From Hyaloraphidium curvatum SAG 235-1 (Eukaryota; Fungi; Monoblepharomycota), in NCBI GenBank assembly GCA_025558095.1, contig JAIVFI010000010.1, forward strand, positions 1 to 64,000: 64,000 bases of DNA. Direction: 5' to 3'. The notes beneath the pieces were generated by a model, which did no database searches, was not told the origin of the DNA, and worked only from the letters and a program-made list of their open reading frames with translations. Shown here one piece after another: positions 4,043 to 57,230 of the stretch (its first letter is position 1; each line of letters opens with the position of its first letter). A program made the translations under genes and the position numbers.

Positions 4043-5584
4043 ATGGCTGGATCGCCCGGCAGGACAGCGGCCGCCGCGGCGGCCGACCCCTCTGCGGTCG
4101 CTGTGGCCGGCACGGGGCGCCTCCGCGACTTCTCCCAGGCCGAATGGCTCGCGGTCTTGCCGTCGCCGCCGAACGCCCGCGGCGCCAGCCGTCTCTTCCG
4201 CGGCGGCGGCGCCGGGCCGCCGCGCCCCCCGCTGGACCGCCGCACGCTGCTGCACGAGGTCGGCCGCCGCAGCGCGCTGCTGCTGTTCGGGGTGCGGCTG
4301 CACCTCGCCGCCGCGCCGTGGGCGTCGCGCATCGTGCTGCGGGGCGCGCTGTGGGCGCCGCCCACCGCCGTCGTCGTGCTCTCCGCGCAGGCCTTCAACG
4401 ACGGGCGCTACGGGACCGCGCAGCTGGCCGCGGGCATCTTCGCCTCCCTGTTCTGCGTCGTCGGGGGAGTCGTCATGGTCCTCTTTGCCTCGCTGGGCCG
4501 CACGTACAGGCAGGTTGCCACCGCAAAGGGACATTCGGCGCAACGACCGCCCGAGCCGGACTACGCCGCGCACCCTCTGGCCGTCCTGGTGCGCTGGTCG
4601 CAGCTTGTCGAGCTGGATTCGGCCGGCGCAGACCGCGAGCCCCGTGGGGACGTTTCGCCGCTCCTCCGCCACGACGAGGCGGACCCCCTTTGCCCATGCG
4701 CGGCGGGCACCTGCGCCGGGTCCCTGGTCCGGAGCGTTCCGGTGCTGAGCCTCCTCGAAGTGTCGTGCCGGCTTCTTGCGGTGACGACGCCGAACGTTCT
4801 GGCGCTCTCAAGTCCCATGATCATCAGTGCCGGGCCCTTTTGGACCTCATGGTGGGCGGTCCCGGGGATGCTTGCCCTCCTTGGCCTCGCGGACTACGTA
4901 CCCGTCAATGTCGTCGGCCGCTTCCCCACCAACGCCTCGCTCCTGCGCCTTTCCCTTCGGATCCAGCGCCGCGCGATGCTCCTCTCGCTCCGCAGCCTCC
5001 TCGCCTCCTTTAACCACGCGCTCTCCTCGGCCGCGGAACCCCCGGACGACGACCTATACGCCAGGTTGCACTACCGCCTCGCCGACGCGTGGGAACGCCG
5101 CGTGCCCCACATGTCGGGCGGCGTCCTCCTGGGCTTCGCTGCCGGCATGTTTCTCGTCTCCCTCGTCTCCAACCTCGCCGCGGGCTCCTGCGTGCCCGCC
5201 TACGCCGCCGCGGGCTTCGCCTATATACTCCTCATGGCCTCGACGGACCTAGCCCACGCAGCCCTGTCCAACGAGCAGATCGAAAGGATCACGGACCTCT
5301 ACCGCGGCGCGCAGACCGAGATCCGGGACATGCTCGTGCGCGCGGAACGCCACCCCCCCTCCCCTGCCCTCTCCCGGGTGGAGAGGGCCCTACGGAGGCA
5401 CGACGCGCTGCTGTCGTCGTTCAGGGAGGTCGCGGTGTTCAGGGGCCGCTTCCTGGGGTTCGTCGCGGACTTTGGCGTGCTACGGACGTTCCTCGTGACC
5501 GTGTTCACGCTGGCCGTGGGGTTGTGGTCGGTCGCAAGGGGCTCGGTGTTCTTCACCCTGGACTCGATATGTCCGGCGCGGTGA
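4043..5584 (+). CDS. Intronless multi-pass (about 7 TM) membrane protein, gustatory-receptor-like/7TMIC-like family, paralogue A
   Basis: Long ORF. Shares FSxAExxAxLP, LLRHD..CPC..CAG, NLAAGSC and C-terminal GRFLGFVADFGVLRTFLVTVFTLAVGLWSV...CP with 6131-7618 and 55824-57230. Confidence 0.75.
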   Translation: MAGSPGRTAAAAAADPSAVAVAGTGRLRDFSQAEWLAVLPSPPNARGASRLFRGGGAGPPRPPLDRRTLLHEVGRRSALLLFGVRLHLAAAPWASRIVLRGALWAPPTAVVVLSAQAFNDGRYGTAQLAAGIFASLFCVVGGVVMVLFASLGRTYRQVATAKGHSAQRPPEPDYAAHPLAVLVRWSQLVELDSAGADREPRGDVSPLLRHDEADPLCPCAAGTCAGSLVRSVPVLSLLEVSCRLLAVTTPNVLALSSPMIISAGPFWTSWWAVPGMLALLGLADYVPVNVVGRFPTNASLLRLSLRIQRRAMLLSLRSLLASFNHALSSAAEPPDDDLYARLHYRLADAWERRVPHMSGGVLLGFAAGMFLVSLVSNLAAGSCVPAYAAAGFAYILLMASTDLAHAALSNEQIERITDLYRGAQTEIRDMLVRAERHPPSPALSRVERALRRHDALLSSFREVAVFRGRFLGFVADFGVLRTFLVTVFTLAVGLWSVARGSVFFTLDSICPAR

Positions 5585-6130
5585 GTGGCGGATGGCTGGC
5601 TGTCCGTGGCCTTCGCCGTCAGCTACTGGGCGGCCAGATCAGCTGCGCGCACTGCAGTCCGCACATCCGATGCACGGCCTGCCGGACTTGATGGCGGCGG
5701 CGGCAGCTGGAGGACCGGGAGTGGATCTCAAGCCAATCCACGCCCGAGCCCGAACGTTCGGTGGTCCTGGCGCAGTGGCGCGTCCACGGCGGCGTCGACG
5801 GCGCCGGCGCGGTGGCCGCCAACCGGCCCGAGAAGCGCAAGGAGGGCATCCGCAAGGCGGTGGACAAGCAGCTGCGGCACTTTTTTCGGCACCAAGATCT
5901 GCCGGACGCGCACCGACCGGGAGATCGAGTACTTGGAGGGGCACGACAAGCCTGGCGAGGTCACCAAATCTATCCTTCACTGGCTGGTTCCCCGTCGATC
6001 CTGGTGGAAAACACTGGTCCAGAACTACTTGTGTGCATGTCCACTGTCTTGCAGCGCTGACACGCTCGATTGCACGGAAAGCACATCCAACCCACCAATT
6101 CCTCCCGGTCACCCGCCGTTCCGGGATCCA

Positions 6131-7618
6131 TCACGCTGACTGGAACGGGCACACGATGTCCATGGTCACGAACGTCCCCCCCGCGCGCAGCACCGAGTAC
6201 AGACCGACCAGCAGGGTCAGGAACGTGAGCAGCGTCCCCCTGACCGTGGCCCCCGTGATGGGGAACCCGAAAAAGGTCGCCCGGTGCTCGTCGGCCTCGA
6301 GCATCGTCGAGAGCTCCTCCTTGTGCCCCTCGAGCGCCGACAGCACCGCGGCCCGGGAGGCGGGGTCGTCGGTCGGTGCGACGCCGATGCGCCGGGCGGC
6401 GGTGCGGATGCGGGAACGGGCGCGGCGCACGAGCGCAGAGAGCTCGGTGACTTCGCGGTTGGCGACGGCCACCACGACGAGGTGGGTAAAGACTTCGGTG
6501 AGGAGGACGAGGGTCGCGAGGGTGTTGAAGGTGACGCAGGAGCCCGCGACCAGGTTGGCGATGCCCACGACGGCCTCGGAGAGCACGGCGAAGGCGAAAA
6601 AGCGCATGCCGGCTTCCGAGGAAGCGGTGGCTTGGTTCCAGCACGCCGCGTAGCGGGAAAAGAGCGCGGCGTAGTCGTCGCCCAGGGGGACCTGCGATGC
6701 GGGATCGGGGCCGGCGGCGCCGCGGCAAACGTGCTCCGCGACCCGCTCGCAGCCCTCCACGGTGCGGTCCAGCAGGACGTTGAGGGCGCGTACGTGCAGG
6801 CGGCGCTGCAACGACAGCGTTGCGACGGATGTGTCGAAGAAGGTCTCGTTGACAAACTGGCTCGAGAGGAGGACGGCGGAAACCGCCAGGAAGGCCGAGG
6901 AGAGCAGGATGCTCCACCACTCCGACCAATTGGCGGAACCGAGGGTGTAGAAAGCGGTGTACGACATGCCGAAGCACCACTCCACGACCACGTGAACGAC
7001 GTGGACGGCGAACCGTGCGGCGGCGGCGGCGTCCGCGCGGCTCCCGGCGAGCGGGCCGGCGCAGCCGGGCAGACAGCACGGGCAGTTCCCGTCGCCCGCA
7101 TCGTGCCGCAGGAGCGCCGACGAGCCAGCGGCGTCCTCGGCCGCGAGCCGGCGGTACCGCGCGATCGTCGACACCCCGTCGAGGCTGACTTGGTCGCCGG
7201 GGCGCGCGGCCGGCAGCCAGCCCCACGCGCCGGGCGCCGCCACGCCGTACTGCACGGGGAACAGCAGCAGCGTGCCGCCGCGGAAAGCGGTCGCCACCGC
7301 GAGCTGCCGCAGCCCGAACCGCGCGCGGCCGAAGCCCCACGCCGGCGCCAGCAGCGCCGCCATCGACACGCACCACGCCGCGTACGCCCCCGGGCCGAAG
7401 CCGCGCGGCATGTGCGTCTTGAACCACAGCACGCCGCGCACATGCGCGCGCAGGAGCGGCGGCAGGACGTCCGCGTCAAAGGTCGCGTACGTCGGCGGGT
7501 CCGGGTCCGCCGCAGCTCCCAGCGCCGGCCCGCTGTGCGGAAACAGCGCAGCATATTCGGACGGCGTGAAGCCGAGCAGGCCGGCCGGGCCGTCGTCGCC
7601 CTCCAGGGACCCCTTCAT
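6131..7618 (-). CDS. Intronless multi-pass membrane protein, same family, paralogue B
   Basis: MKGSLEG...GFTPSEYAALFP; LLRHDAGDGNCPCCLPGCAG; NLVAGSC; ATFFGFPITGATVRGTLLTFLTLLVGLYSVLR...CP. Confidence 0.75.
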   Translation of the reverse strand: MKGSLEGDDGPAGLLGFTPSEYAALFPHSGPALGAAADPDPPTYATFDADVLPPLLRAHVRGVLWFKTHMPRGFGPGAYAAWCVSMAALLAPAWGFGRARFGLRQLAVATAFRGGTLLLFPVQYGVAAPGAWGWLPAARPGDQVSLDGVSTIARYRRLAAEDAAGSSALLRHDAGDGNCPCCLPGCAGPLAGSRADAAAAARFAVHVVHVVVEWCFGMSYTAFYTLGSANWSEWWSILLSSAFLAVSAVLLSSQFVNETFFDTSVATLSLQRRLHVRALNVLLDRTVEGCERVAEHVCRGAAGPDPASQVPLGDDYAALFSRYAACWNQATASSEAGMRFFAFAVLSEAVVGIANLVAGSCVTFNTLATLVLLTEVFTHLVVVAVANREVTELSALVRRARSRIRTAARRIGVAPTDDPASRAAVLSALEGHKEELSTMLEADEHRATFFGFPITGATVRGTLLTFLTLLVGLYSVLRAGGTFVTMDIVCPFQSA

Positions 7619-7812
7619 TATGGCCAAGGGACTGCCAGATTGCGTGGTGCTGGCTTGCTGGACGCCGTTCCCAGATGCGGCGCTTGATGTTGTGGTACGA
7701 CATGTTGGCGGCGAGTAGAACCTAGGTCCACCTAGGTCGTCCGATGACCCTGCTGATACTGATTTTCCGCCTCCCCTCCCCGCTCCCGTGTCCCCGTCCC
7801 CGCAGCCGGCAC

Positions 7813-8949
7813 CTACTCCCCCCTGGCCAGCGCCGCGATGTCCCTCGCCGTATCCCTCGACACATCCGGGCACACGTGGAATATCTCGGTGCCGTGGATG
7901 GTCCCCATGTGCTGCTTGCACCTCGCGGGCACGCCCGCGCGGAGGAGGAGGCGGTAGAACGCGATGCCCTCGTCGAGGAGGGGGTCGCATTCGTTGACGA
8001 GGATGCGGGTGGGGGGGAAGCCGGCGACGTCGGATTCGGTGGAGAAGAGGGGCCACGCGAGGGGGTCCTTGGCTTCGAAGGCGCTCAGGCCGTAGCCTTG
8101 GAGCGGGGGTGAGCGCGGGGCGCGGTGGGGGGGCGAGGGAACGCACCGACTGTCCAGCGGTTGTTGTGGAGGTCCAGGAGGATGCCGTTGTTGGAAATCG
8201 TCGAGGGCAGGTCATCGCGGGGCCAGCTGCCTGCGATGAACGGGCAGAGTGCGTAGATGCCCTGTCGAGACCAATCAGCACGGAGCGAGGGTTCCCCAGC
8301 ATCGGTTTCTCCCGACCTTGATGAGCCCGATGTTCCCCTCCTTGTTGAGCTTGAGCGCCGTGGCGATGGCCAGGTTCCCGCCGCCGCTCTCCCCCGCGAC
8401 GATGATCTTTTCGGGGTCGATCCCGAGCTCCGCCGCGTGCGACGCGACCCACTTGACCCCCGACACGCAGTCGTTGAGCCCCGCCGGGTACTGCGCGACC
8501 TCGGGCGTCGAGCTCGGCTCGAGGTAGTTGCGGAAGTCCACCATGGCGACGCAGACGCCCTGGTTGGCGATGACGCGGGCCCACGCGCGGTACGGCCCGT
8601 CGTACGCCGAGCCGAAGGCCATGCCGCCGCCGTGGAAGTACGTGACGCATGGGAGCGTGTCGCCGTTGTCCGGACGCGTGACGCGGACCTTGATTTTGTT
8701 GCCGTCGGGGTCGCTCTTGAACTCGAACTCGGACACTTTCAGGCCCTTGGAGGGCGCGGCGGCCTCGGTATCGACGGCCTCGAGCGACGCCTTGGTGACG
8801 GCCGCGCGAGCCAGTCCCTCGGGGCTGCGCGCCTCCGCGAGGAGCGCTTCGTACGAGTCGACGTTCGCCTGCGGGAGCGCCGGGAACGCGCCCATCAGCA
8901 GCTGGATGCGCGGGTCGATGCGCGGGTCGGTCGCAATTTTGGACGCCAT
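7813..8949 (-). CDS. Alpha/beta hydrolase, hormone-sensitive-lipase family esterase (2 introns)
   Basis: HGGG oxyanion motif and GESGG nucleophile. ECDPL (Asp) and IHGT (His) appear after splicing intron 8262-8316 and a second intron near 8098-8146. Stop TAG at 7813-7815. Confidence 0.9.
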
Positions 8950-10535: not shown

Positions 10536-12431
10536 CTACGCCTCCGCCTTGGCCTCCCTGGCCCTCGCAGCCTCCCACTTGACGATCCGCTCCACCTCGT
10601 CCCGCTCCTCCTTGAGGTAGAAGTACACCCACATCAGCGGGAGCGAAATCAAGTTGAACGCCGCGACCAGGAGCATCGGCCCCATGAGCGCGCCGCCGCC
10701 GGGCAGGGACGGGAACGATCCCGAGGAGTAGAGCGCGCCGCCGATCAGGGGGCCGACGACGATGCCGACGGCGAAGAAGATGTTGAAGATGCTGAACACC
10801 TGTTCGACCGTGAGCACCAGTCCGAATGGAGCACTTGAGGGGCCGCTCACCTTCGCCGCGGCGTTCTCGGGCACCAGCAGAGTGAGTTCCGGCAGCGCGG
10901 GCGTCACGGCGGCCGCAGTGACCCATCCGTAGACGAACAACGCGATGCAGATGCCCCAGTACGTCGAAGGCAGCGCGAGCATCGGCGCAGCGACCGCCGA
11001 AGCGGCCAGGCCGAGGTAGAGGATCCACTTGCTGCCGTACATGTCGCGGAGCCAGCCGCTGACGATGGCGCTGACGCAGTTGGGCACCACCTGGGGATGG
11101 CGGGTGAGAAACGTACAGCGCGATCCCGGGGGAGGCCCACCATGGCAAGGAACACGAGCCCGATGACAAGGCTGTTTGCGTTGAAGGGATCGCCCGATAG
11201 GAACAGCGGGATCACCGCCTCGATGGTCCCCATGCCGATGCCGGCGATGATGCAAAGCCAGTTCATCAGCATCACGCACGGGTCGAGCCAGAGCTGCCAG
11301 AAGGTCGGGTTCTCTGTGCGCAGCACGGTCCAGTTTAGGTTGGTCCTCCGGATCGTCCGCACCGGTGCCTCGGCGGAAACCTCCACCGGCTCCCCCTTGG
11401 CCGCCTTGTCCGCCGCCTCGGCCATCTCCTTGGCCTCGGCCTTGTTCACCGTCCCGAACCCGACCTTGTCCGCCCTGTCGACGGTGTGGTCCGGCTCCGC
11501 GACCATCAGCCGCAGGACCATGTCCGCGACGATGACGACGCAGTTGAGGATGAAGGGCGAGTAGTAGCCCAGCTTCTCGAACATGATGCCGCCGACGACG
11601 GGGCCGATGAGCATGCCGATGTTGAGGCCGAGGAAGACGGTGGACATGGCACGGCCGAGCTCGTGCGCGGGGAAGAGGTCCGAGATGAAGGCCAGGCCGA
11701 CCGTCCTGCAGTCGGGGGGATCAGCGGGTCGGAACATCGGCAGCGGCGGTACGACGCACCAGATGGAGGCCGCCGCGACGCCCTGCAGGAACCGCGCAAA
11801 GTACAACAGCGCCAGCGAGTTGGCCAGCATGAACATGACGATGGCCACCAGCTGCACCCCAAGCCCCGCGATCATCGGCCACTTCCGGTTCTTGTACCGG
11901 TCCGAAATCACGCCGTAGATCGGGCTCGCGACCAGCGTGCCGACGCCGAAGAGGGCGACCAGGATGCCCACGAGGGTCGAGCTCTTGCCCGAGATGTCGT
12001 AGCCCAGCCGCTCGAAGATGAAGGGGAGGAGGGGGATGATGATGGAGTAGACGAGGAGGTCGACGGCGACGGCCGCCGTGACGACAAAGACGGCGAAGGA
12101 GGGGGAGCGTGCCAGCCGGTACATGAAGGTGCCCGGCGTGTTGGAGATAAAGAGCTGCTTCTTTGGCGGAGGGGCAGCGGGCGCGTCGGCGGCCGCCTTC
12201 GGGGCCGGGTCGGTTCCCGAAGAGTCGTCGGCGACCGAGGCCGTGCGCGATCCGTCGTCCGAATCGGCGTCCACGGCGCCTGAAGGGGAGGGCACGCGCG
12301 TCAACGACAAAGAGGGCGTCATCTCCGGGGCGGTGGCGGGGATTTCGAGGGCAGCCGAAGGCGGTGAGGGCGTCTGCCGGGGGGTTTCAGCGTGCGGGCC
12401 GGGGGAGCGCTCGGCCGGGACTCACGGCCAT
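10536..12431 (-). CDS. MFS transporter, vesicular amine transporter (SLC18)/DHA1-like
   Basis: ATG GCC|GTGAGT first intron splices in frame. Motifs DLLVYSIIIPLLP, GVISDRYKNRK (MFS motif A), ARFLQG, GMLIGPVVGG, GIVVGPLIGG. Several short introns. Confidence 0.88.
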
Positions 12432-13003
12432 TGCGGAAACGAGGAGCGGAGCCCCTTTGGTTCGACGAGCGCGGTCGAGTCCGATTGCGATGTTCGGCAG
12501 CGTTCCAAAATCGCAAAATCGTTCGAAATGCCCGGTGCCGTTGCGTCTTCCGTTCCGCAGGATGTGGTGAGGTCACCAGCCGCCGCGATCGAAGTCCTCG
12601 GAGCGGAGCATCCAGCTATCCGGAGCGGCCACGGGCGGAGACGGAAAGAACTTTTCGAATGCGGGTTGCTTGGGTTACGTTACTAAGGGCGGTTTCCGGG
12701 CCCAGGGAGCGTCTGCGTATTTCCCGTCCAATCCATGCGTAACATCAGCATGTTTCCGTACTCCCCGTCCCACCACTGTTTGCAGGACCACCTTGTGATC
12801 CGACCAGGCCTGTTCTTTCCCGCAAACCGCGCCAGACGACATCCCGAGCACCTGATCAGAGTCGAATGCTCGCATTATAGAGCCAGATCATCACAACAGG
12901 CGTCGAACGCCTTTCCACAGTCTATTCCTCGATCCACTCTGCGCGCAATACCTCCGCATCAACCACGACCGAGACGGAGACCGGAAACCCGTCCGCAATC
13001 GCG

Positions 13004-14692
13004 CTATCTCCCCTCGCCAGCCTCGGCGTCAAGGGCCCCCGACGCCTCTAACCTCCCCTCTTCCCCCAATTTTCCCAGCTCCGTCCCCATCTTCCCCATG
13101 TCCGCGCCCTTCCCCAGCTCCACCGCCCCTTCTCCGTCCCCTTCCAGCAGCGCCGGATCCACCCCCTTCAGCGCCTCCTTGGCCCCCTTCCCGTTCATCA
13201 CCGTCGTATCGTGCAGCAGCCTCCTGCTCCTCCCCCTGTACAGCAGCGACAGCAGCACCGTGAACCACGACACCCCCGTCAGCGCCCAGAGCACGGCCTG
13301 CCTGTCCTGCACGCCGCCCAGGACGGGGGTGAGGACGACGGCCCAGACGGCCGCGCCGGAGAAGATGAAGTAGTTGGAGACGGCGGGTTGGAGGTCGGGG
13401 AAGGTGGCCTCGAGGCAGAGTTCGAAGACGATTGGGAGGACGGGGAAGTTGGTGACGCCGAAGAAGGCGGCGGAGAGGAGGATGCCCCAGTACATGTCGG
13501 GCTTGAGGGCCAGGGTGAGCCCCGTGAAGGCGATCGAGGAGCCGACCAGCAGGACGCGCAGGGTGGAGACCCAGATCGAGTACCGGTCCACGAGCTTGGC
13601 CACGGGGAGGGAGAACCAGCCGGCTATGATGATCGTAGGCATCAGGAAGCCGACCTGGGAGGGCGTGTAGCCGAACGGCAGCAGGATCGGGGAGACGAGG
13701 AGGAGCAGGACGAAGAAGATCGACATCTGCAGGCTCATGATGAGCCACAGGAGGAGGTACGGCACCGAAGTGGCGGCCGTCTTGAGCGACTTCTTGAACC
13801 GGGCCGACTGCCCGTGCCGCGAGGCGGTCATGACCTCGGCTGAGGGCGTCGGCGGTGTGGGCGGGCGGTCCGGAACAAAGATCATGATGCACACCGGCAC
13901 GACGGAGTAGGAAGCCCAGATGAGGAAGGCGAGGGGCACCTTGTCCGGCGACGAGACGATGTAGCTCGTCGCAGACGACGAGATCAGGATACCGATGGAG
14001 GGGGAGACCGACGCCAGGGTGTTGGCCACCGTGCGCTCACGGAGCCCGAACCAGGTCTGCGCGAGGCGGGTGGTGCTCGAGGTGCCGAAAGGGCGGCCGA
14101 TGCCGATCAGCACCTGGCCCACCAGGGCGATGGCGAGCGAGGCGGTCTTGTTGGTGGCGAAGGTGCCAAAGTAGCGCACCCAGGAGCCGGCGCAGTTGAG
14201 CACGGCGCCGGTGAGCAGGGCGAACTTTAGCCCCCGCGAGTCGATGGTGTAGGCCGACAAGAGCCCCGTCACGATGAGACTGATATATATCACGAGACCA
14301 AACCAATTGATCACGTTGGTCGTCGTCTCGTAATATGCAGCCGCACGGGACGAAACCGGCGCCAGCGTGTTCCAGTTGAGCGAGGCCGAGGTGGCTAGAG
14401 AGGTCAGGGCGCCCAGAGCGAACCACCGCTGCGGGTAGACCCGGTACTCGGCGGCGGTCCCGTCCGGCACGGCGGAGAGGTCCGTGAGGTCCTTCCCCGC
14501 GTCCGGCCCGCCTCCTCCCGCCGCTGATCCGAGATTCCCATTTAGGTCCCCGGCCGGACTACTGCCGCCCGCCACCGCGTGCCCCGCGGTTCCGACCAGC
14601 TCCGCCGCCCCGCCGCCCGCCGCCATGCCGTTGAGCGTGGCGGCAGTGCTCACTGCGTCGTCCGCAGCGTCGTCGACGGGCGAAGAGGACAT
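13004..14692 (-). CDS. MFS transporter, FLVCR/SLC49-like
   Basis: 562 aa ORF with about 12 hydrophobic segments. Motifs YRVYPQRWFAL, IDSRGLK, WFGLRERTVAN, PPTPPTPSA. Confidence 0.88.
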   Translation of the reverse strand: MSSSPVDDAADDAVSTAATLNGMAAGGGAAELVGTAGHAVAGGSSPAGDLNGNLGSAAGGGGPDAGKDLTDLSAVPDGTAAEYRVYPQRWFALGALTSLATSASLNWNTLAPVSSRAAAYYETTTNVINWFGLVIYISLIVTGLLSAYTIDSRGLKFALLTGAVLNCAGSWVRYFGTFATNKTASLAIALVGQVLIGIGRPFGTSSTTRLAQTWFGLRERTVANTLASVSPSIGILISSSATSYIVSSPDKVPLAFLIWASYSVVPVCIMIFVPDRPPTPPTPSAEVMTASRHGQSARFKKSLKTAATSVPYLLLWLIMSLQMSIFFVLLLLVSPILLPFGYTPSQVGFLMPTIIIAGWFSLPVAKLVDRYSIWVSTLRVLLVGSSIAFTGLTLALKPDMYWGILLSAAFFGVTNFPVLPIVFELCLEATFPDLQPAVSNYFIFSGAAVWAVVLTPVLGGVQDRQAVLWALTGVSWFTVLLSLLYRGRSRRLLHDTTVMNGKGAKEALKGVDPALLEGDGEGAVELGKGADMGKMGTELGKLGEEGRLEASGALDAEAGEGR

Positions 14693-15284
14693 TTAGCTCT
14701 GCAGAAGAAAACGAGTCCCACCGGGTGGCAAGTGCCGAGCCAAAAGGCGGCGGGGGATGAATAAGCAGACCTCGCACGCGGAAGACCGTGCAGAGGAGGC
14801 CGAGTGACAAAGAAACGGAGACGCCTTAGATATGGCCTTGGCTAAAGTGGTTTCGGCCGCGAAAGCTTCCAGTGCAGAGCTGGAGCAGCCGAAATGTTCT
14901 TTCGATCACACGACGCACAAGGAGCACAAGTTCCGAAAGCAAGGAAGACAATAAGGAAAAGAGCTTGTATACAGCTCTGAAAGTGGTTTCTGGAATAGCC
15001 GTGTCCATCAGCCGAGGGGCCAAGGCGGCGCATGGTAGTCCACTCGGCAACCCGCCCGGACGGTTCAGGGCGCCAATGGGAGCCGGCCGAGCAGCCTTGG
15101 CCAGGGCAGCTGCACATCCTTTGGCTTTTTCTCCTCCGATCGTACTTGCCTAGTGCAAATCGGCAAATCGGGCAAATGTCGTCACCTGCTCGACAAGTTG
15201 GTGACTCCACCGCCGCAAGCACCGCCACCTTGCACTCACAGCCAAACTCGCCCGCGAATCCCGGTCGAACTGACCGGGCTCAAG

Positions 15285-17282
15285 ATGGAAATGCACTTTC
15301 TCGCCTCTTTATGCACGGCGCTTGCCGCCGTCGAACTGTTTGGACGCGTCGCCGCGACGCCGGTCGGCGTCCCCGGCCTGCTCTCCGCGCTGCCGCCGGC
15401 CGCTGCGGACGGCCTCCCCGGCGCTGCGGTCGCCGCCGCGAACGCCGCCACGCAGCGCACGTTCTTCACGCTGGTCAACAAGGACCTGCTGGGCGCGGAC
15501 GGTCCGCCGTCGCTTCGCCTCGACCTCTTCGGCGAGTCGCTCGTCGCGGACCGCGTCTCGGCCGACGCGGGGCCCGACGGGACCAGCTGGCAGGGCACCG
15601 TGCGCGGCTCGCCGCTCAGCTCCGTCACCTTCTTCTCCTCGGGCGGTTCGGACGCCGTCGCCGGCACGGTGCGCACCGTGGGCGGCACTTTCGAGGTCGT
15701 CCCGACCGACGGTGGGCCGGTGCACGCCGTGTCGCAGCTCAACGCATCGGCGTTTCCGCCCGAGCTGGATCCCATTGTGGTCAAGGAGCTCCCAGGGGAG
15801 CGCAGCCTCGAGGAGGACTTTTCCGCTCAGGTCGGCGGCCTCGAGCCGGAGCATCCTGCGCGAGCGCGCGACCGGCTGCAGCGCCGCGTGGATCCGTACG
15901 TCGCCGACGTGCTCGTGCTGTACAGCGCCGTCGCAGCTGCCCGGATGGGAGGGCAGGCCGCCACCGAGACCCGAATCAACCTCGCAATAACAGAAACCAA
16001 CGGCGCGTACACAAACAGCCTCGTCAACCTGCGTCTCCGCCTTGCCCACGCGCAGCAGGTCGCCGTACCCGCGGACGTGGAGGTCGACTTCTACCAGGCC
16101 CTCCCCTGGGTGCGACAACTGCCCGCGGTCTCGGCCATGCGGGATCAGTATCGTGCGGATTTTGTTTCGCTTTGGATTGACAACACTGATTTCTGCGGCC
16201 TCGGGTACATGATGGGACCCGACGAGGTCTCGGTGACGTTCGCCGAGGCGGCGTACAACGTGGTACACTGGGGCTGCGCAACGGGCTACTTCTCGTTCGG
16301 CCACGAACTGGGGCACAACATGGGTGCGCACCACGACCGCGCAAACGCCGGAGGGAGCCTGCCCGCCTACCCCTACTCGTACGGATACCAGCACCGGAAC
16401 AGCCTGTGGCGCACGATCATGGCGTATGATTGTGACGCCGGCTGCCCGCGGCTGCAGTATTTTTCGAACCCGGCCGTGCAGTACGACGGGGCCGCCATGG
16501 GCGTGGACCGTTCCCAGGCCAACTCGGCCGATGTCGCGGGGACCTTCAACTCGCATGCGGACATCCTGGCGAGGTTCAGGGATGCGCCACCGACCAGCAC
16601 GCTGAGCCGGACGCGAACCCGGTCGAGCACCTCGCTGAGCAGGACGCAGACCCCCTCGAGCACCTCGAAGAGCGCGACCCGGTCGACCACACGGACTAGG
16701 AGCGCTTCCAGCACGAGCCGCACGTCTACCCGGTCGCGCACCCGGACGACTAAATCCCGCACCGCCTCAGCTAGCGCGACCAAAACGGCGACTCGATCCA
16801 TCTCCTCCCTCAGCCGGACATCCACAAGCGCCTCGCGGACGGAGACCCAATCCACTACCACCCGGTCGCCGACGACGTCTACGACGACCAGCGAGACTCC
16901 CACGACGACCACCAATACCCCTACGACATCCACGACCTCCTTGACCACCTCGACGACCAGCGAAACTCAAACCACCAGCACCGAAACCCTCACTACGACT
17001 TCCCTAACCCCGACGACTACCTCGATCACCGTGCGAGCAACGGCCCGTGGGCCTCTGACCACCCCGCGTTCCCTGCGGCGCACGAGCACGAAGCGCCGCA
17101 CGTCGACCAAGCGGCGCACGTCGACCAAGCGCCGCACGTCGACCAAGAGGCGGACGACGACAAAGAGGCGGACGAGCTCCAAGAGGCGGACGACGTCGAG
17201 GAGGCGGACGACGTCCAAGCGGCGGACGAGCACCAAGCGCCGCACGAGCACGAGGAGGCGGACGAGCACCCGTCGGGCCTGA
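15285..17282 (+). CDS. Secreted zinc metalloprotease, peptidyl-Asp metalloendopeptidase (M72)/reprolysin-like, with T/S stalk and basic repeat tail
   Basis: Signal-like N-terminus; CATGYFSFGHELGHNMGAHHD zinc motif; WRTIMAY Met-turn; CPRLQYFSNP. Intronless. Confidence 0.88.
   Translation: MEMHFLASLCTALAAVELFGRVAATPVGVPGLLSALPPAAADGLPGAAVAAANAATQRTFFTLVNKDLLGADGPPSLRLDLFGESLVADRVSADAGPDGTSWQGTVRGSPLSSVTFFSSGGSDAVAGTVRTVGGTFEVVPTDGGPVHAVSQLNASAFPPELDPIVVKELPGERSLEEDFSAQVGGLEPEHPARARDRLQRRVDPYVADVLVLYSAVAAARMGGQAATETRINLAITETNGAYTNSLVNLRLRLAHAQQVAVPADVEVDFYQALPWVRQLPAVSAMRDQYRADFVSLWIDNTDFCGLGYMMGPDEVSVTFAEAAYNVVHWGCATGYFSFGHELGHNMGAHHDRANAGGSLPAYPYSYGYQHRNSLWRTIMAYDCDAGCPRLQYFSNPAVQYDGAAMGVDRSQANSADVAGTFNSHADILARFRDAPPTSTLSRTRTRSSTSLSRTQTPSSTSKSATRSTTRTRSASSTSRTSTRSRTRTTKSRTASASATKTATRSISSLSRTSTSASRTETQSTTTRSPTTSTTTSETPTTTTNTPTTSTTSLTTSTTSETQTTSTETLTTTSLTPTTTSITVRATARGPLTTPRSLRRTSTKRRTSTKRRTSTKRRTSTKRRTTTKRRTSSKRRTTSRRRTTSKRRTSTKRRTSTRRRTSTRRA
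17076..17273 (+). repeat. Coding tandem repeat, 11 x 18 nt, encoding RRT(S/T)(S/T)(K/R)
   Basis: Translation RRTSTK RRTSTK RRTSTK RRTSTK RRTTTK RRTSSK RRTTSR RRTTSK RRTSTK RRTSTR RRTSTR, with synonymous codon variation between units. Confidence 0.9.
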
Positions 17283-52690: not shown

Positions 52691-55632
52691 TCAGCTCCGC
52701 CCCATCTCCCTCCGGCGCCTTCGCATAGTGCGAGTTAAGCCATTTTGCCGACAGCCAAGATACGCGGTCGAGAGACGGTGTAGCTCCGTGGCGATGTCCG
52801 CCATCGCCGGCCGCTTCGCGGGTTCTTCCTCCCAGCAAGACTCCACGAGACCCCACACGTCATCCAGGACTCCGCCGGGGCGCGGAGGCCGTTTACCGCT
52901 GAAAATGGCCCTCATGATCTGGCCGGAGAGGTCAGTTGGGGCGAGGAGAGCGAGAAGTCCATTCAAGAAAGACCCACCGCGGCCGGCGAGGTCAGATCCG
53001 AGTACGGGTCGTGTCCGCCCGAGAGCACCTGGTAGCACATCATGCCGAACGTCCATACGTCTGCTTGCCTCCCCATGGGTTGGTGGTCGAAGAACTCCGG
53101 GGGCGCGAACCGGATCGTGGCCCCGTGGAGACCCTTGTACTGGTACTCCTTGTTGCCGTTGCTGTCCTCGATCCGGGTGCGGATCTTGGAGATGCCAAAG
53201 TCCGCAATCTTACCTACGGGGTTGCCCGAGCCGTCGACAGCCACGAGTACGTTGTCCGCCTTCAGATCCGAGTGCACGACGCCGAAGGAATGCAGGCGGG
53301 CGATCCCTGATGCGGCGTGCGCCAGCATGCGAACCGAAAGGGGCTTTGGCCAGCCCTTCGAGGCAAGGAACGACTTGAGGCTGCCACCGCTGCAGAGCTC
53401 CGTGACCAGAAAAGTGGGAGCGGTCCTGTAGCCGAGCAAGGGTACGACTGCGGGGAACGCGCGGTTCAGCAGGAGTTCAAGGAGTCTTGGCGTCGTACCC
53501 GCGATTGTCGTGCCGAGGGACGTCGATCCACATCTTCAGCTCGGCCTCAAACATGGCCTTGGCTTCCTGTTCCTCGAGCGTTGCATGCAGAACCTTGACA
53601 GCGACGTTCTCCCCTAGGAACCGGCCGCGGAAGACCTCCCCGAAGCCGCCGCTCCCCAGAGGCTGGTCCCTGAAGATCTGCACGTCGGCTTCCTCCACCC
53701 ACACCGCTTTCGGCTGCTCAACAGCTTGCTTCAACGTCATCGCGACGGATGCCATGGTAGGGCGGCGATCCGGCTCCTCCACCCAGCACAAAAGCACCGT
53801 GTTCCACACGGCGTCGGGAACGCCTCCCGGCCGCGGCGGACGATCGCCTTTGAAGATGGCCTTCATGATCTGCGCCCGTATCGCGGGTTAGTGAGCACCC
53901 GTGGAGCAGCTCGGTTTCCTTACGGCGGACGCCGAGTTGAGGTGGTCGTACGGATCCCTGCCCCGCGAAAGGACCTGGTAGCACATCATCCCGAACGACC
54001 ACACGTCGGACGGCTTTCGTAGCGGTTCGTCGTCGAAGAACTCGGGCGGCGCGTACCGCACCGTGGCCCCCGCCAGCCCGCGGTACTGGTACGCCTTGTC
54101 GCCTTTGGTGTCCTCGATCCTCGTCCGCACCTTGGCCAGGCCGAAGTCGGCGATCTTGCCCACCGGCGTGCGCGCACCGTCGTCGACGAGGACGTGCTCG
54201 GCCTTGAAGTCTGAGTGGATGACGCCTTTGGAGTGGAGGAACGTCATGCCGACCGCGGCGTCGGCGAGGAGGCGGAGAGACAAGGCCGGGTCCCAGTTCC
54301 GGGCGGGGTCGGCAAGGAAACTCTTCATGCTTCCCCCCGCGTAGAGCTTGGTGATGAGGAGCGTGGGAGAGGTGCGGTAGCCGAGGAGCGGGACCACTGC
54401 GCAAGGATCCGCGGTTGACCACAAAGCGAGAGGTGTTTGCCGGCCGACGCACCGTTCTCATGGGCGGGAAGCTCGGCCCACACCTTGACCTCCGCCTCAA
54501 GAAACGTGCTTGCCTCCTCATTGCTGTCTGTGTCCAGTGCAACCTTGACGGCCACATCCGTCAGCCCCAGGTACTTGCCAGGATAGACGGCACCAAAGCC
54601 ACCCTTCCCGAGGCAGCTCATTCGATTGTAGACAACGTCGGTTTCGTCCACCCAGAACGCCGTCTTGGAGCGAGCCAACGCCGGTTTCGCGTCGTCTCCG
54701 GCCGGAAGACCGCGCCCTGAACCGCTCGGCACAGCAGTACGAGTCAAAAGGTCGCTGGGCGCCCGCGCACCCGCTGCCTTCAACGCCGCGAGTTCTTGCT
54801 CTAGCTTTAACCTCTCGGCGAGCAGCGCCAGATCCTTCGCTTTGGCTTCATTCTCGAGGTCCAGGCGCCGGCGTTGGGCTTGTTCTTCCTCTTCAATCCG
54901 CCGACGTTGCAGCTCAAGCTTCTCGCGCTCGAGTGCGAGATCTTTCTCCCGGCGGCGACGTGCTTCCTCTTCCGCGGCCTGACTTTTGAGCACCCCCTCC
55001 TGATTCCTAGGCACCGCCTCTCTCTCACGGATCGCTTCGGCGGCTTTGGGTTCCGCCCTCTCACGTTGTTTTCCGTCCCCGAGCCTGAACATCCTCTTGA
55101 GCACGTCCGCAGCGTTCTCTGACGGTCCCTCCTTCGGCTTTGCTTTCAGCTCCGTGAACCGGTTCGGATCCCCCCCCTTGGACTCCCACTTCCTGATTTC
55201 CTTCGCCCTCATCGGATCCGACGCCAGTTGTGCCGGGATCCCTGCTTCCCAGATGTCCGCCGCCTTCTTGACGCAGTTGGGGTCGCCGGTCCACTTTGCC
55301 CCGTGTTCCCAAAAGGTCAGCGCTTGCTTGGTGTGCCCGGCGTTCTGGTACAGCTCCGCGAGGTATTGGATCGCGGGCAGATGGGGGCTCTTCTGGTCCA
55401 AAGCGGAGAGCTCGAGGCCAAACTGAACCTCGTCTCGGAGCACCTGGATCGTCTGCGCGTTCTGACCGTCCGGATATGGTTCCCGGGCGAGACGCGCGGC
55501 CCTGTCGCGCATCTCCATCGCCCGCACATAAAGCTTGTGCGGCGGCATCTTCAGCATCTCCTGCATCACTCTTGGGTCCATGGGGAGGGTGCCACGCACG
55601 TCCTTCGCCGACGGGGAGCCAAACGCTTCCAT
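52691..55632 (-). CDS. Tandem (two-domain) TKL-like protein kinase with N-terminal Sel1/TPR-like repeats and coiled coil
   Basis: Domain 1: GKGGFG, VAVK, HSDFKAEH, DFG, APPE. Domain 2: GSGGFG, VAVK, HSDLKADN, DFG, APPE. Four introns at paired positions. Confidence 0.88.
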
Positions 55633-55823
55633 CGCTCGTACGGATGCGCGCGGGCGGAGTCCTGCTGCCCTGCGCAGGCGAGCGCCTGTCCGTCCAGTCC
55701 CTGAGCGACAGACGCGTCGCGTCCGGGGCGCTCCAGAGACGGAGTGGGCCCGCCGTGCTGACGACCAATTTTACGGCGCGTGGCAAGGGAATTCCCTCCC
55801 GCCACCGCCGAGACACAAAGCTC

Positions 55824-57230
55824 ATGCCGGCCTTTAGCGCCGCCGAGCTGGCGACGCTGCTTCCAGGTTTCACTGCCAGCGAGGAGGAAAAGCCGTTCGG
55901 CCTGGACGTCTTCGGGGACGGCGTCGGAGGCGATCCCGACGTGGGAGACGCGCCGCCGGACCTCTCCTCGTTCCCAGCGCTCCGCCGGGCCGTCGCCGCC
56001 GATCGCACGATCGCGCGTCTCGCCGCGTTCCTCGGCCGCGGGCTGGGCGCGCTCTACTTTGCGGCATACATCGCGTGCACCGCCGCGTTGCTCGCGCCCC
56101 CCTTCGTGTTCGCCGACGGGCGGTACTCGCAGCGCGCCCTGGGTGTCGGCACCGCCGCCGCCGTCTTCGCCCCCGCTTGGGTGCTCCTGTGGTACACGCT
56201 GTTCGCGCTGCAGGCAGCGCCGTCGACCGCGACGCTCAACCGGACGGTGCTGGCCACCGTGTCCGGCTGGCACGAGCTGTGTTCGTCGCCCGAACCGTCG
56301 GAGCTCGTGGCACACCGGCAGGACCCTCTGCTGCCCTGCCCGTGCCAGGATTGTGCCGCGTGGCTGCCCAGGCTCGCCGGCAACGTGCGCCTGCCGCACA
56401 TCTTCCTGCACACCCTCAACGCGGTCTTTGCCAGCTGGGTCGCACCGCTCTGGACCCCCTTGGTCGTCCTTGCACCCGACCTGTGGACCTCGCCCTTTGT
56501 CGCCGCGGTGGCCGTCGGTCTGCCCTGCGCGCTGCTCACGAACCTGGTCCTCATGACCGCCATCGTCCCCGGCCACGCGGCGCTGATCGCCCTGTCGACG
56601 CGGCTGCAAGTCCGCGCCGTCGATCTCGTCCTCCGATCGTGCATGGCCGATGCCTATGCGCGCTTCGAGCACCCCGCGGTCGCCGACGCCCCGCCAGCCG
56701 TCGACATCCTCCCCCTCTCGACTCTCCACTCCCGCCTTTCTGCGCGCTGGCGCCGCGCTTCGGCGGAACTCACCGCCTCCCGCCGCACCTTCGCCGCCCT
56801 CTTCCCGGGCTGGATCGTCGCCGCCGTCATCTCCGCCGCCGGCGCGGGCTGCATCCCCGCGTGGCCGTTGCTCATCCTCATCAACGCCTCCATCGTGTTC
56901 TGGACCGACCTCATCCTCGTCGCCGCCTCGAACGAAGGCCCCACACGCGCGGCGGGGCTGTACCGCTCCGCCGGCCGGACCGCCGCCGAGCTCGCGCAGC
57001 GGTGCGGCGCTTCTGACCCCGCGCTTGCCTCTTGCCTGCGGGGATTCCGCGATGTGTTGTCCTCCTACGCCGGCGAGGACGACGTGCGGGCGAGGCTGTT
57101 CGGGTTCCCGGTGGATTGGACGCTGCTGCGGAGCCTGGCGGCGACGGTGCTCACGCTCGTGTTTGGCGCGTGGACGCTGCTGAGGTCGGCGGGGGTATGG
57201 TTCACCATGGAGACATACTGCCCGTCTTGA
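55824..57230 (+). CDS. Intronless multi-pass membrane protein, 7TMIC/GRL-like family, paralogue C
   Basis: MPAFSAAELATLLP; H..PCPCQDCA; AGAGCIP; ARLFGFPVDWTLLRSLAATVLTLVFGAWTLLR...YCP. Confidence 0.75.
   Translation: MPAFSAAELATLLPGFTASEEEKPFGLDVFGDGVGGDPDVGDAPPDLSSFPALRRAVAADRTIARLAAFLGRGLGALYFAAYIACTAALLAPPFVFADGRYSQRALGVGTAAAVFAPAWVLLWYTLFALQAAPSTATLNRTVLATVSGWHELCSSPEPSELVAHRQDPLLPCPCQDCAAWLPRLAGNVRLPHIFLHTLNAVFASWVAPLWTPLVVLAPDLWTSPFVAAVAVGLPCALLTNLVLMTAIVPGHAALIALSTRLQVRAVDLVLRSCMADAYARFEHPAVADAPPAVDILPLSTLHSRLSARWRRASAELTASRRTFAALFPGWIVAAVISAAGAGCIPAWPLLILINASIVFWTDLILVAASNEGPTRAAGLYRSAGRTAAELAQRCGASDPALASCLRGFRDVLSSYAGEDDVRARLFGFPVDWTLLRSLAATVLTLVFGAWTLLRSAGVWFTMETYCPS

What the first reader, a model, noticed from the sequence alone, without database searches (positions are those of the whole stretch)
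4043..57230. Uncharacterised intronless 7-TM family resembling gustatory-receptor-like (7TMIC) channels, three paralogues
Seen: ORFs 4043-5584, 6131-7618 and 55824-57230 are very divergent yet share ordered motifs. These are N-terminal F(S/T)x(A/S)ExxxxxP; an aromatic-G-R(Y/F) motif between TM1 and TM2; H-x-CPC-x-CA; LxxR(L/I)xxRA; LxxRxxxxW; a tight TM5-GxC-TM6 hairpin; AxxN...LxRxA; and a terminal xxFGFx(V/I/A)x..R...T..TL..GxxxxxR...CP. There are about seven hydrophobic segments, with long loops after TM4 and TM6. Established: insect GR/OR, animal GRL and plant DUF3537 proteins have this inverted topology and a split TM7 preceded by an FG/GF-type motif, and GRL-like proteins are reported from a chytrid. 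Inference: this is a lineage-expanded family of ligand-gated chemosensory channels in a fungus. The insect TY...QF signature is absent, so the link is not proven.
Basis: partly seen in the sequence, partly recalled or inferred. Interest (0 to 1): 0.85.

Follow-up and report, generated by a model that had tools for sequence, protein, structure and literature searches.

The report
Huge fungal insect-chemoreceptor-like channel family
The three genes are real, intact members of a family of roughly 250-450 seven-pass membrane proteins in the non-swimming aquatic fungus Hyaloraphidium curvatum whose predicted shape and membrane orientation match insect smell and taste receptor channels, a receptor-sized repertoire that the papers I could search do not report for any fungus.

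Summary
Observation confirmed. The three ORFs are uninterrupted and 28-30% identical (BLASTP E 7e-24 to 6e-30), and they share all the listed motifs.

They are three deep branches of a very large family, not a trio:
- 89 scored matches in the genome.
- 257 hits to the D-x2-CPC-x4-C motif, against 4 for the control pattern.
- 454 representative proteins at 50% identity. All 13 named ones are "hypothetical" or mis-merged proteins of Hyaloraphidium curvatum.

No sequence method links the family to anything known (Pfam, PDB profile search).

AlphaFold models of C (pLDDT 85) and B (pLDDT 89) match insect OR/GR structures. These fill the top 7 of 48,161 chains (Z 10-13.6, 305-347 residues aligned). 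The C model also matches plant DUF3537 (TM 0.58/0.61).

The positive-inside rule gives N-in/C-out in 106 of 106 members. TM7b is the most conserved segment and TM1-6 the most variable. dN/dS is 0.26, and 0 across TM7b.

The insect TM7 motif is absent, so homology is not proven. Tetramer formation, conductance, ligands and expression are untested.

Family-specific features are a cytoplasmic His + 3 Cys cluster (putative zinc site) and a conserved extracellular Cys pair.

This scan had already reported the same family from other parts of this genome (five earlier findings); my tests agree with them.

The parts
4043..5584 (+). Gene A: intronless 513-aa family member (stop included). NCBI annotates only an N-truncated 369-aa model that lacks TM1-TM2.
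   Evidence: ORF; family HMM E 2e-177; P0015 is a subsequence of A; nearest paralogue L005 at 57% identity.
6131..7618 (-). Gene B: intronless 495-aa family member, convergent with A (546-bp tail-to-tail spacer). AlphaFold model m546f95caf170.
   Evidence: model pLDDT 89.4, pTM 0.90; Z 13.6 to AaegOR10 with 344 of 375 residues aligned; dN/dS 0.26 against its 76%-identical paralogue on contig 7.
55824..57230 (+). Gene C: intronless 468-aa family member. AlphaFold model m8574da8c1aad.
   Evidence: model pLDDT 85.4, pTM 0.84; top 7 of 48,161 PDB chains are insect OR/GR, Z 12.2-10.1; TM 0.58/0.61 to DUF3537.
4682..4714 (+). A: D-x2-C-P-C-x4-C core of the conserved His/Asp/3-Cys cluster in the predicted cytoplasmic loop between TM2 and TM3 (putative zinc site).
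   Evidence: Pattern hit; His and two of the Cys are invariant, the third Cys is 99% and Asp 96% conserved in 106 members; cytoplasmic placement follows from the topology.
7061..7093 (-). B: the same D-x2-C-P-C-x4-C core (residues D176-C186). In the model it is a non-helical loop with pLDDT 94-97.
56313..56354 (+). C: variant of the cluster (H164...D167...C172-P-C174-x2-C177). The first family Cys is replaced by Leu and an extra Cys follows two residues after the second, so His + 3 Cys are kept.
   Evidence: Alignment; C is not hit by the canonical pattern.
5441..5581 (+). A: FGF linker, TM7b (predicted pore helix) and C-terminal tail ending in Cys-Pro. This is the most conserved block of the family.
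   Evidence: Invariant R467, G472, F473, R481, T486, T489, C510, P511; per-segment entropy.
6134..6283 (-). B: linker, TM7b and C-terminal tail (residues 446-495). It shows no amino-acid change against the closest paralogue, although dS is 0.42.
   Evidence: DSSP H456-479 preceded by a broken helix H419-445.
57084..57227 (+). C: linker, TM7b and C-terminal tail (residues 421-468).
   Evidence: DSSP H399-416 (TM7a), break, H432-455 (TM7b), strand 459-461 paired with strand 343-345 of the TM5-6 hairpin.

Best explanation
A, B and C are functional, intronless genes of a very large family (about 250-450 genes), so far seen only in Hyaloraphidium curvatum, that encodes seven-pass membrane proteins with the 7TMIC fold of insect odorant and gustatory receptors, animal GRLs and plant DUF3537. 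Shown by computation: seven TM helices; a cytoplasmic N-terminus and an extracellular C-terminus; long cytoplasmic extensions of TM4-TM6; and a TM7 split into a cytoplasmic TM7a and a membrane TM7b. Inferred by analogy with solved OR/GR structures: four subunits assemble through the cytoplasmic helical 'anchor' bundle; the highly conserved TM7b helices (R-T-x3-T-x2-T...G-L-W...L-R) line a central cation pore; and the fast-diverging TM1-TM6 bundle of each subunit forms a ligand pocket that gates the pore. The family would then act as an array of ligand-gated chemoreceptor channels that diversified by birth-and-death duplication. Two lineage-specific additions are inferred. One is a cytoplasmic His + 3 Cys (+ Asp) cluster just before TM3 that probably binds zinc and stiffens, or regulates, the loop next to the anchor domain. 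The other is a Cys in the TM5-TM6 hairpin paired with a Cys in the C-terminal tail, probably an extracellular disulfide that pins the tail above the pore helix.
For: Real genes under selection:
- Uninterrupted ORFs with GC3 of 0.89-0.92.
- dN/dS 0.25-0.47 in five paralogue pairs. For B against its nearest paralogue, dN/dS is 0.00 over linker, TM7b and tail with dS 0.42.

Family size:
- 89 scored matches out of 774 first-look candidates.
- 257 motif hits against 4 for the control.
- 454 representatives with E<=1e-3 and 288 with E<=1e-30.
- 13 of 13 named hits are H. curvatum proteins.

Fold:
- C model: the top 7 of 48,161 chains are all insect OR/GR, Z 12.2-10.1, 305-342 residues aligned. The next rows are unrelated helical pieces of about 130 residues.
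- B model: Z 13.6 with 344 of 375 residues aligned, top 15 all OR/GR. The exhaustive search again puts OR/GR in the top 7.
- In Foldseek, OR/GR chains fill all of the top 10 rows for the C model and the top 5 for the B model, with probabilities up to 1.00; unrelated rows have probability about 0.1.
- ESM Atlas: TM 0.58/0.61 to the DUF3537 cluster over 360 residues, and 0.55-0.63 to unnamed arthropod and cnidarian clusters.
- Language-model features also bring up DUF3537 (0.93, 196 shared features).

Topology: K+R within 15 residues of the TM ends is 12.8 on the N-terminal face against 3.0 on the other face, in 106 of 106 members. Median loop lengths are 72/72/65 on the inside and 13/19/4 on the outside.

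Receptor-like conservation: entropy is 1.72 bits in TM7b against 2.65-2.97 bits in TM1-6.

Split TM7 and long TM4-6 helices appear in the DSSP output of both models.
Against: - No sequence or profile method connects the family to 7tm_6, 7tm_7, Trehalose_recp or DUF3537, or to solved OR/GR chains.
- Z-scores of 10-13.6 lie in the range that long helical bundles can reach without homology, as the tool's own caveat says. RMSDs are 5-6 A.
- Both sides of the Atlas comparison are predicted models.
- No tetramer was modelled and no conductance or ligand is known.
- Transcription was not shown. The only public run holding the region covers the A-B intergenic spacer as well as the genes and may be DNA.
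- The organism has no known motile stage (PMC8371127), so a classical chemotaxis role is not obvious.
Confidence: 0.55

Rival explanations
1. The proteins have the 7TMIC fold, by homology, but are not chemoreceptors. They could be channels or membrane proteins with another role, such as constitutive or voltage-, osmo- or metal-gated channels, organelle membrane proteins, or self/non-self or surface-variation molecules. The large copy number would then reflect something other than ligand diversity.
For: The fold evidence is the same as for the main explanation. The functions of non-insect 7TMICs (GRLs, DUF3537, PHTF) are largely unknown according to the literature read (PMC7746228, PMC9998090). 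The host is non-flagellated. A conserved cytoplasmic His/Cys cluster could be a metal or redox sensor rather than a structural site.
Against: Hundreds of divergent paralogues with the transmembrane bundle as the most variable part and the pore helix as the most conserved is the pattern typical of ligand-diversified receptor families. Paralogues lie in local clusters, and about 5 of 89 matches carry stop codons, which fits birth-and-death evolution.
Confidence: 0.27
2. The resemblance to 7TMICs is convergent. This would be an unrelated, lineage-specific seven-helix family (function open: transporter, receptor or enzyme) that happens to share helix lengths and packing.
For: There is no sequence or profile link and the TM7 motif is absent. 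Z of 10-13.6 with RMSD 5-6 A is not decisive for all-helical proteins (tool notes). Foldseek E-values are only 2e-3 and the Foldseek TM-scores to PDB chains are 0.3-0.47.
Against: In two exhaustive searches with two 28%-identical paralogues, seven of the eight insect OR/GR representative chains listed take the top seven places of 48,161 and the eighth ranks 9th or 12th. All eight have full-length, co-linear alignments of 299-342 residues, whereas other hits cover 190 residues or fewer, apart from two partial matches of 233-242 residues to a merozoite surface protein. TM exceeds 0.5 to DUF3537 and to metazoan clusters. The unusual inverted topology, loop-length asymmetry, split TM7 and conservation peak in TM7b all coincide with 7TMIC hallmarks. 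An independent embedding search also retrieves DUF3537.
Confidence: 0.13
3. The proteins are GPCR-like seven-transmembrane receptors (N-terminus outside) or secondary transporters.
For: Seven hydrophobic segments alone would allow it. The PDB profile search gave chance-level hits to a muscarinic receptor and an opsin (E 0.3-1.2).
Against: The positive-inside rule puts the N-terminus inside in 106 of 106 members. GPCR and transporter chains score Foldseek probability of 0.16 or less and TM of 0.2 or less. There is no Pfam GPCR or transporter hit.
Confidence: 0.03
4. The ORFs are spurious or dead: long open frames are common in 70% GC DNA.
For: Many overlapping long ORFs exist in all frames around these genes. 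Transcription was not demonstrated.
Against: Full-length conservation across hundreds of paralogues; dN/dS well below 1 and zero in TM7b; GC3 of 0.89-0.92 in the proposed frame; confident AlphaFold models.
Confidence: 0.02

Closest known systems
Insect odorant and gustatory receptors (Orco, MhOR5, AaegOR10, AgamOR28, BmGr9, DmGr43a, DmGr64a; Pfam 7tm_6 / 7tm_7)
   Same: The predicted fold matches over about 320-345 residues. Shared features: seven TM helices with N-in/C-out topology; long cytoplasmic TM4-TM6 extensions; TM7 split into 7a and 7b; highest conservation in TM7b and lowest in TM1-6; a repertoire of hundreds of genes, often in local clusters, with some pseudogenes.
   Different: Pairwise identity in the structural alignments is 6-15%, with no HMM link. 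The TM7 (T/S)Y...(Q/K/E)(F/L/M) motif is absent. The genes are intronless. The N-terminus is longer (50-90 residues, with a conserved F-x3-E-W...P motif) and so is the loop between TM2 and TM3. The His/Cys3 cluster and the EL3 to C-terminal-tail Cys pair have no counterpart that I know of. The host is a non-motile unicellular fungus.
Plant DUF3537 proteins (PF12056), a recognised 7TMIC branch
   Same: Best named match among predicted structures (TM 0.58/0.61, 360 residues aligned) and the best named family in the embedding search. The TM7 motif is also unrecognisable in DUF3537 (PMC7746228).
   Different: DUF3537 families have 4-12 members per plant (PMC7746228). There is no Pfam hit of PF12056 to these proteins or to this genome.
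Chytrid GRLs (SpunGRL1 and SpalGRL1 of Spizellomyces; Benton et al. 2020, PMC7746228)
   Same: Early-diverging fungi; GRL-type secondary structure; only one of the four TM7 motif positions is kept.
   Different: They are single-copy per genome and were detectable by sequence or HMM similarity to GRLs. The Hyaloraphidium family has hundreds of copies and no detectable sequence similarity to GRLs with the tools used.

Membership tests
7TMIC superfamily (OR/GR/GRL/DUF3537); criteria of Benton et al. 2020, PMC7746228 | Length about 350-500 aa | tested here: met
   468, 495 and 513 aa. The median of 150 family representatives is 500 aa.
7TMIC superfamily | Seven transmembrane helices | tested here: met
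   Seven hydrophobic segments in the family-average hydropathy profile. Seven membrane-length helices in the DSSP output of both models.
7TMIC superfamily | Intracellular N-terminus and extracellular C-terminus (inverted relative to GPCRs) | tested here: met
   Positive-inside rule: K+R is 12.8 against 3.0 near the TM ends, with the same sign in 106 of 106 members. This is a prediction only; there is no experimental topology.
7TMIC superfamily | Intracellular loops longer than extracellular loops | tested here: met
   Median loop lengths are 72, 72 and 65 (inside) against 13, 19 and 4 (outside).
7TMIC superfamily | Tertiary fold of solved OR/GR subunits, including long TM4-6 and split TM7a/TM7b | tested here: met
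   Z 10.1-13.6 with 305-347 residues aligned. OR/GR chains fill the top 7 of 48,161 chains for two paralogues. TM 0.58/0.61 to DUF3537. DSSP shows H419-445, a break, then H456-479 in B.
7TMIC superfamily | TM7 motif (T/S)Yhhhhh(Q/K/E)(F/L/M); diagnostic but not definitive according to PMC7746228 | tested here: not met
   The family consensus is T468-V-A-V-G-L-W-S-V. Only the first position is kept.
7TMIC superfamily | Detectable sequence or profile similarity to a known GRL, OR, GR or DUF3537 protein, or no significant similarity to any other family | tested here: inconclusive
   No hit to 7tm_6, 7tm_7, Trehalose_recp or DUF3537, nor to any other family, at E<=10. No OR/GR hit in the PDB profile searches. 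Only the weaker alternative of the criterion ('no other family') is met. The HHblits-type profile-profile test used in the literature was not run.
7TMIC superfamily | Homo- or hetero-tetramer with a central pore lined by TM7b | not testable with these tools
   Only monomer prediction was available. TM7b is the most conserved segment, which is consistent with a pore helix but is not a test.
7TMIC superfamily | Ligand-gated cation conductance | not testable with these tools
   This needs electrophysiology or calcium imaging.
Animal GRL genes | [quoted passage not shown] | tested here: not met
   All three genes, and most paralogues, are single open frames. The literature treats this feature as uninformative for intron-poor protists.
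GPCR-type 7TM receptors | Extracellular N-terminus and GPCR fold | tested here: not met
   N-in by the positive-inside rule. GPCR chains score Foldseek probability of 0.16 or less and TM of 0.2 or less.

The most novel reading that the evidence does not exclude
Hyaloraphidium curvatum, a non-motile unicellular fungus, runs a chemosensory array of about 300-450 ligand-gated 7TMIC channels. That would be the first receptor-scale expansion of this fold outside animals. It would have arisen independently of the insect OR/GR radiations, and it would carry its own cytoplasmic zinc- or redox-sensing module (His + 3 Cys) coupled to the gate.
Probability: 0.35. Interest if true: 0.9.

Novelty: new variant of a known kind. 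Interest (0 to 1): 0.8.

Why it matters
Outside animals, 7TMICs have been reported as single genes or small families: one GRL in each of two Spizellomyces species, six in Thecamonas, and 4-12 DUF3537 proteins per plant (PMC7746228). The function of every non-insect branch is essentially unknown.

A fungus with hundreds of intact, selected, highly diversified members shows that receptor-scale radiation of this fold is not tied to nervous systems or to animals. It also offers intronless genes from a fungus for which a strain has been genome-sequenced, so members could be cloned directly from genomic DNA for de-orphanisation, structure determination and evolutionary analysis of pore against pocket.

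It raises a biological question too: what does a non-swimming planktonic fungus sense with so many channels?

The conserved His/Cys3 cluster and the extracellular Cys pair are testable, family-specific handles. I found no paper in the searchable library that mentions Hyaloraphidium together with gustatory receptors.

Tried and rejected
- Word-indexed protein search. With C alone it found nothing. With the 106-member profile it found only 3 proteins. The Ala/Leu/Arg-rich words swamp the candidate list, so this tool says nothing about how widely the family is distributed.
- Pfam on A, B, C and on 22 members: no relevant hit even at E<=10.
- PDB sequence-profile searches: only chance-level hits.
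- Pfam 7tm_7 and DUF3537 against the whole genome: nothing. The controls rang nowhere either, so this is not evidence of absence.
- Metagenome scan. The larger alignments had no stretch conserved enough to search with. The three-sequence alignment gave 230 pattern hits, none confirmed as a relative.
- Expression. One public run holds 85% of the words of the A-B region, but its type is a guess. Its contigs also cover the intergenic spacer, and they break at an 80%-GC stretch (7002-7359) and where sequence is probably shared between paralogues. Neither transcription nor splicing can be read from it.
- Mobile-element explanation for the copy number: rejected. Nucleotide similarity between B and its closest paralogue stops at the ORF borders, and the flanks of A, B and C match no other locus, apart from one 85-bp stretch at 73% identity upstream of A.
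- A genuine esterase-7TM fusion, as in the NCBI model: considered unlikely. See the notes below.
- Not done: profile-profile comparison (hhalign) with 7tm_7, DUF3537 or the Spizellomyces GRL, because no reference to those sequences was available and long sequences may not be typed in.
- The tail of the 454 representative hits (ranks above 150) was not shown, so relatives in other organisms cannot be excluded.


Full report
**1. The observation**

The three ORFs are present and uninterrupted: A 4043-5584 (+), B 6131-7618 (-) and C 55824-57230 (+). The proteins are 513, 495 and 468 aa long.

Pairwise BLASTP aligns them nearly end to end at 28-30% identity, with E 7e-24, 5e-28 and 6e-30. Two small deviations exist: B has a looser aromatic-G-R-(Y/F) motif, and C has a shifted cysteine pattern.

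A six-frame scan of the window with a family HMM finds exactly these three copies. The window is 63-70% GC, which is why many spurious long ORFs overlap the genes. The proposed frames have GC3 of 0.89-0.92.

**2. Organism and family size**

A profile of 22 paralogues was searched against 1.84 billion representative proteins. It found 454 proteins at E<=1e-3, 412 at E<=1e-10 and 288 at E<=1e-30.

Ten sampled hits, from rank 1 to rank 150, are all NCBI [quoted passage not shown]. Three more named hits are from the same species.

The window's own assembly has 31.9 Mb in 55 contigs. It gave 89 scored matches out of 774 first-look candidates, on most contigs, nearly all as single open frames; five carry stop codons.

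As an independent count, I searched the genome for the DNA pattern encoding D-x2-C-P-C-x4-C. It occurs 257 times, against 4 for the reversed control pattern. About three quarters of members carry the exact motif. The family therefore has roughly 250-450 genes.

Many copies lie in local clusters. One example is five copies within 33 kb on contig 5.

In a tree of 106 members, A, B and C are as distant from each other as random members are. Their patristic distances are 3.4-3.9 against a median of 3.45, and each sits in its own well-supported small clade. Their nearest paralogues are 57%, 76% and 38% identical.

This scan had already reported the same family from other pieces of this genome. My organism identification, copy-number estimate and fold result were obtained independently here, and they agree with those reports.

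**3. Real genes**

dN/dS is 0.25-0.47 in five paralogue pairs. For B against its 76%-identical paralogue it is 0.26 overall. Over the last 50 codons (linker, TM7b and tail) it is 0.00, although dS there is 0.42.

Nucleotide similarity between B and that paralogue is confined to the ORF (7579-6135). The flanks of A, B and C match no other locus, apart from one 85-bp stretch at 73% identity upstream of A. The copy number is therefore not due to a young repeat or transposon.

Neighbouring genes are ordinary:
- two MFS transporters;
- a reprolysin-like peptidase;
- an alkaline phosphatase;
- an EF-G-like GTPase;
- a fungal-type transcription factor;
- an esterase.

**4. No sequence link to anything known**

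- Pfam gives no family for A, B or C even at E<=10, and nothing relevant for 22 members.
- Profile searches of all PDB sequences give only chance-level hits.
- The Pfam models 7tm_7 and DUF3537 find nothing in this genome, but that search had no positive control.

**5. Fold**

AlphaFold2 was run with paralogue alignments. It gave confident models for C (pLDDT 85.4, pTM 0.84) and for B (pLDDT 89.4, pTM 0.90).

C model, exhaustive structural search of 48,161 PDB representatives:
- The top seven chains are AaegOR10, MhOR5, AgamOR28, ApisOR5, DmGr43a, Orco and BmGr9.
- They score Z 12.2-10.1, with 305-342 residues aligned and RMSD 5.4-6.1 A.
- The alignments span model residues about 44-455.
- The following rows are unrelated helical fragments of about 130 residues.

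B model:
- The exhaustive search gives the same picture, with the top seven all OR/GR at Z 12.2-10.2.
- In the second-look search the best score is Z 13.6 to AaegOR10, with 344 of 375 residues aligned, and the top 15 are all OR/GR.

In Foldseek, OR/GR chains fill all of the top ten rows for the C model and the top five rows for the B model. The best E-values are about 2e-3, the probabilities of these rows are mostly 0.97-1.00 (0.77 at the lowest), and TM-scores are 0.3-0.47. Transporters and GPCRs sit at probabilities around 0.1.

Against ESM Atlas models, the C model reaches:
- TM 0.58/0.61 over 360 residues with the plant DUF3537 cluster;
- TM 0.55-0.63 with unnamed arthropod and cnidarian clusters.

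A language-model feature search also retrieves DUF3537 (0.93, 196 shared features), although the recognition value was low.

Caveat: the tool notes that Z below about 13 can arise between unrelated helical bundles. The weight of the evidence lies in four things: specificity (all 7TMIC representatives listed rank within the top 12 of 48,161 chains, seven of the eight in places 1-7), full-length co-linear coverage, replication with two paralogues only 28% identical, and agreement with the topology evidence below.

**6. Topology and architecture**

Family-average hydropathy gives seven hydrophobic segments.

Counting K+R within 15 residues of the TM ends gives 12.8 on the face that carries the N-terminus and loops 2-3, 4-5 and 6-7. 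The other face has 3.0. The sign is the same in all 106 members. This predicts N-in/C-out, the inverted orientation of 7TMICs.

Median loop lengths are 72, 72 and 65 residues inside against 13, 19 and 4 outside.

DSSP of the B model shows:
- TM4 continuing into a long cytoplasmic helix (234-261 plus 265-299);
- TM5 of 46 residues (314-359);
- TM6 of about 50 residues (364-413);
- a cytoplasmic TM7a (419-445);
- a break containing the F-G-F motif;
- TM7b (456-479).

That is the anchor-domain plus split-TM7 layout of OR/GR subunits.

**7. Conservation pattern**

Column entropy is lowest in the following segments:
- the TM5-6 hairpin (1.31 bits);
- TM7b (1.72 bits);
- the linker (1.87 bits);
- the C-terminal tail (2.06 bits).

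It is highest in the membrane parts of TM1-TM5 (2.8-3.0 bits). A variable bundle with a conserved pore helix is what ligand-diversified OR/GR repertoires show.

The TM7b consensus is R460-T-x3-T465-x2-T468-V-A-V-G-L-W-S-V-L-R478. T465 and T468 are three residues apart, so they lie on roughly the same helix face. They are my candidates for pore lining; this is inference.

The GRL TM7 motif (T/S)Yhhhhh(Q/K/E)(F/L/M) is not recognisable; at most its first position is kept. The paper that defines the motif calls it diagnostic but not definitive. [quoted passage not shown]

**8. Family-specific features**

*His/Cys cluster.* H172, C181 and C186 are invariant, C179 is 99% conserved and D176 is 96% conserved in 106 members (B numbering). 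They lie in a non-helical but very confidently modelled stretch (pLDDT 94-97) just before TM3. By the topology above, this is on the cytoplasmic side. One His plus three Cys in the reducing cytoplasm most simply suggests a structural or regulatory zinc site; this is inference. Gene C lacks the first Cys but has gained another two residues after the second (C172, C174, C177). The His + 3 Cys count is therefore preserved.

*Extracellular Cys pair.* C361 in the four-residue TM5-6 hairpin is 99% conserved, and C490 in the C-terminal tail is 97% conserved. Both are extracellular by the same topology. Both models pair a short strand at the hairpin with one in the tail, which suggests a disulfide; this is inference.

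A first-stage note on this window proposed the same two ideas (s1-712777). I reached them from the alignment and models, but I could not measure distances because model coordinates are not exposed.

*N-terminal motif.* A conserved motif, F-x3-E-W-x4-P (the Pro is 99% conserved), precedes TM1.

**9. Mechanism proposed**

By analogy with solved OR/GR channels, I propose tetramers held together by the cytoplasmic TM4-7a bundle. TM7b would line a central cation pore, and each subunit's variable TM1-6 bundle would bind a ligand and gate the pore.

What is shown here: fold, predicted topology, conservation pattern, purifying selection and repertoire size.

What is inferred: oligomeric state, pore, ligand gating, chemosensory role, the zinc site and the disulfide.

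The host is described as an atypical non-flagellated member of Monoblepharidomycota (PMC8371127). Any sensing would therefore control growth, uptake or development rather than swimming.

**10. Expression**

Expression is not shown. The single public run that holds the A-B region is of uncertain type. Its contigs cover the intergenic spacer as well as the genes, and they leave out 7002-7359, which is 80% GC.

**11. Comparison with what is known, and novelty**

Reported fungal 7TMICs are single GRLs in two Spizellomyces species (PMC7746228). Later structure-based screens did not recover chytrid 7TMICs, or could not survey chytrids at all (PMC9998090; bioRxiv 10.1101/2023.08.30.555482). No paper in the searchable library mentions Hyaloraphidium together with gustatory receptors.

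I therefore class this as a new, sequence-orphan variant within a known fold superfamily. Its copy number has no reported precedent outside animals in the papers I read, and it has its own Cys/His features.

Homology to 7TMICs is likely but not proven.

**12. Limits of this work**

Noticed in passing
window 6134-8949 (-): The NCBI model P0151 (872 aa, named 'Alpha/Beta hydrolase protein') fuses an Abhydrolase_3/COesterase-type esterase (about 7813-8949) to gene B. The esterase frame has its own TAG stop at 7815-7813. The fusion needs a GT-AG intron of about 95 nt (donor GA|GTAGGT, overlapping the stop; acceptor CCTAG|G at about 7721). Other family members start at a Met just before the F-x3-E-W motif. 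Similarity between B and its closest paralogue begins at 7579 and does not extend upstream. This is probably a merged gene model, but a real esterase-7TM fusion was not excluded.
   Followed up: partly
window 4043-5584 (+): Gene A is annotated in NCBI only as a 369-aa protein that starts at an internal Met, so it lacks the N-terminal motif and TM1-TM2. The exact full-length products of B and C, as defined here, are not in the protein collection.
   Followed up: yes
window 54325-55823: Gene C lies head-to-head with a protein-kinase-like gene: the ORF 54325-55632 (-) contains a GKGGFGAVY...VAVK ATP-site motif.
   Followed up: no
window 56313-56354 (+): Gene C is the only one of the 106 aligned members without the first Cys of the C-P-C motif. 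It has a compensating Cys two residues downstream (P-C-P-C-x2-C), which looks like ligand swapping in a metal site.
   Followed up: partly
G000 contig 10: 808992-809024 (+) and 813173-813205 (-); contig 5: 783992-816963; contig 12: 691318-732417: The family forms local clusters. On contig 10, two copies 4 kb apart in opposite orientation have an identical 33-nt motif sequence, which points to very recent inverted duplication.
   Followed up: no
window 7002-7359: This stretch inside gene B is 80% GC. The only public run holding the region leaves it uncovered, and the contigs on either side end in Illumina adapter sequence. It looks like a sequencing-bias gap rather than biology.
   Followed up: partly
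window 10907-14692 (-), 15153-17279 (+), 29349-30833 (-), 33539-35938 (+), 42266-44065 (-): The neighbouring genes are ordinary: two MFS transporters, a reprolysin-like M12 metallopeptidase, an alkaline-phosphatase fragment, an EF-G-like GTPase and a protein with a fungal-specific transcription-factor domain. An isopropylmalate-dehydrogenase-like gene with an intron lies at about 57437-59188 (-).
   Followed up: partly
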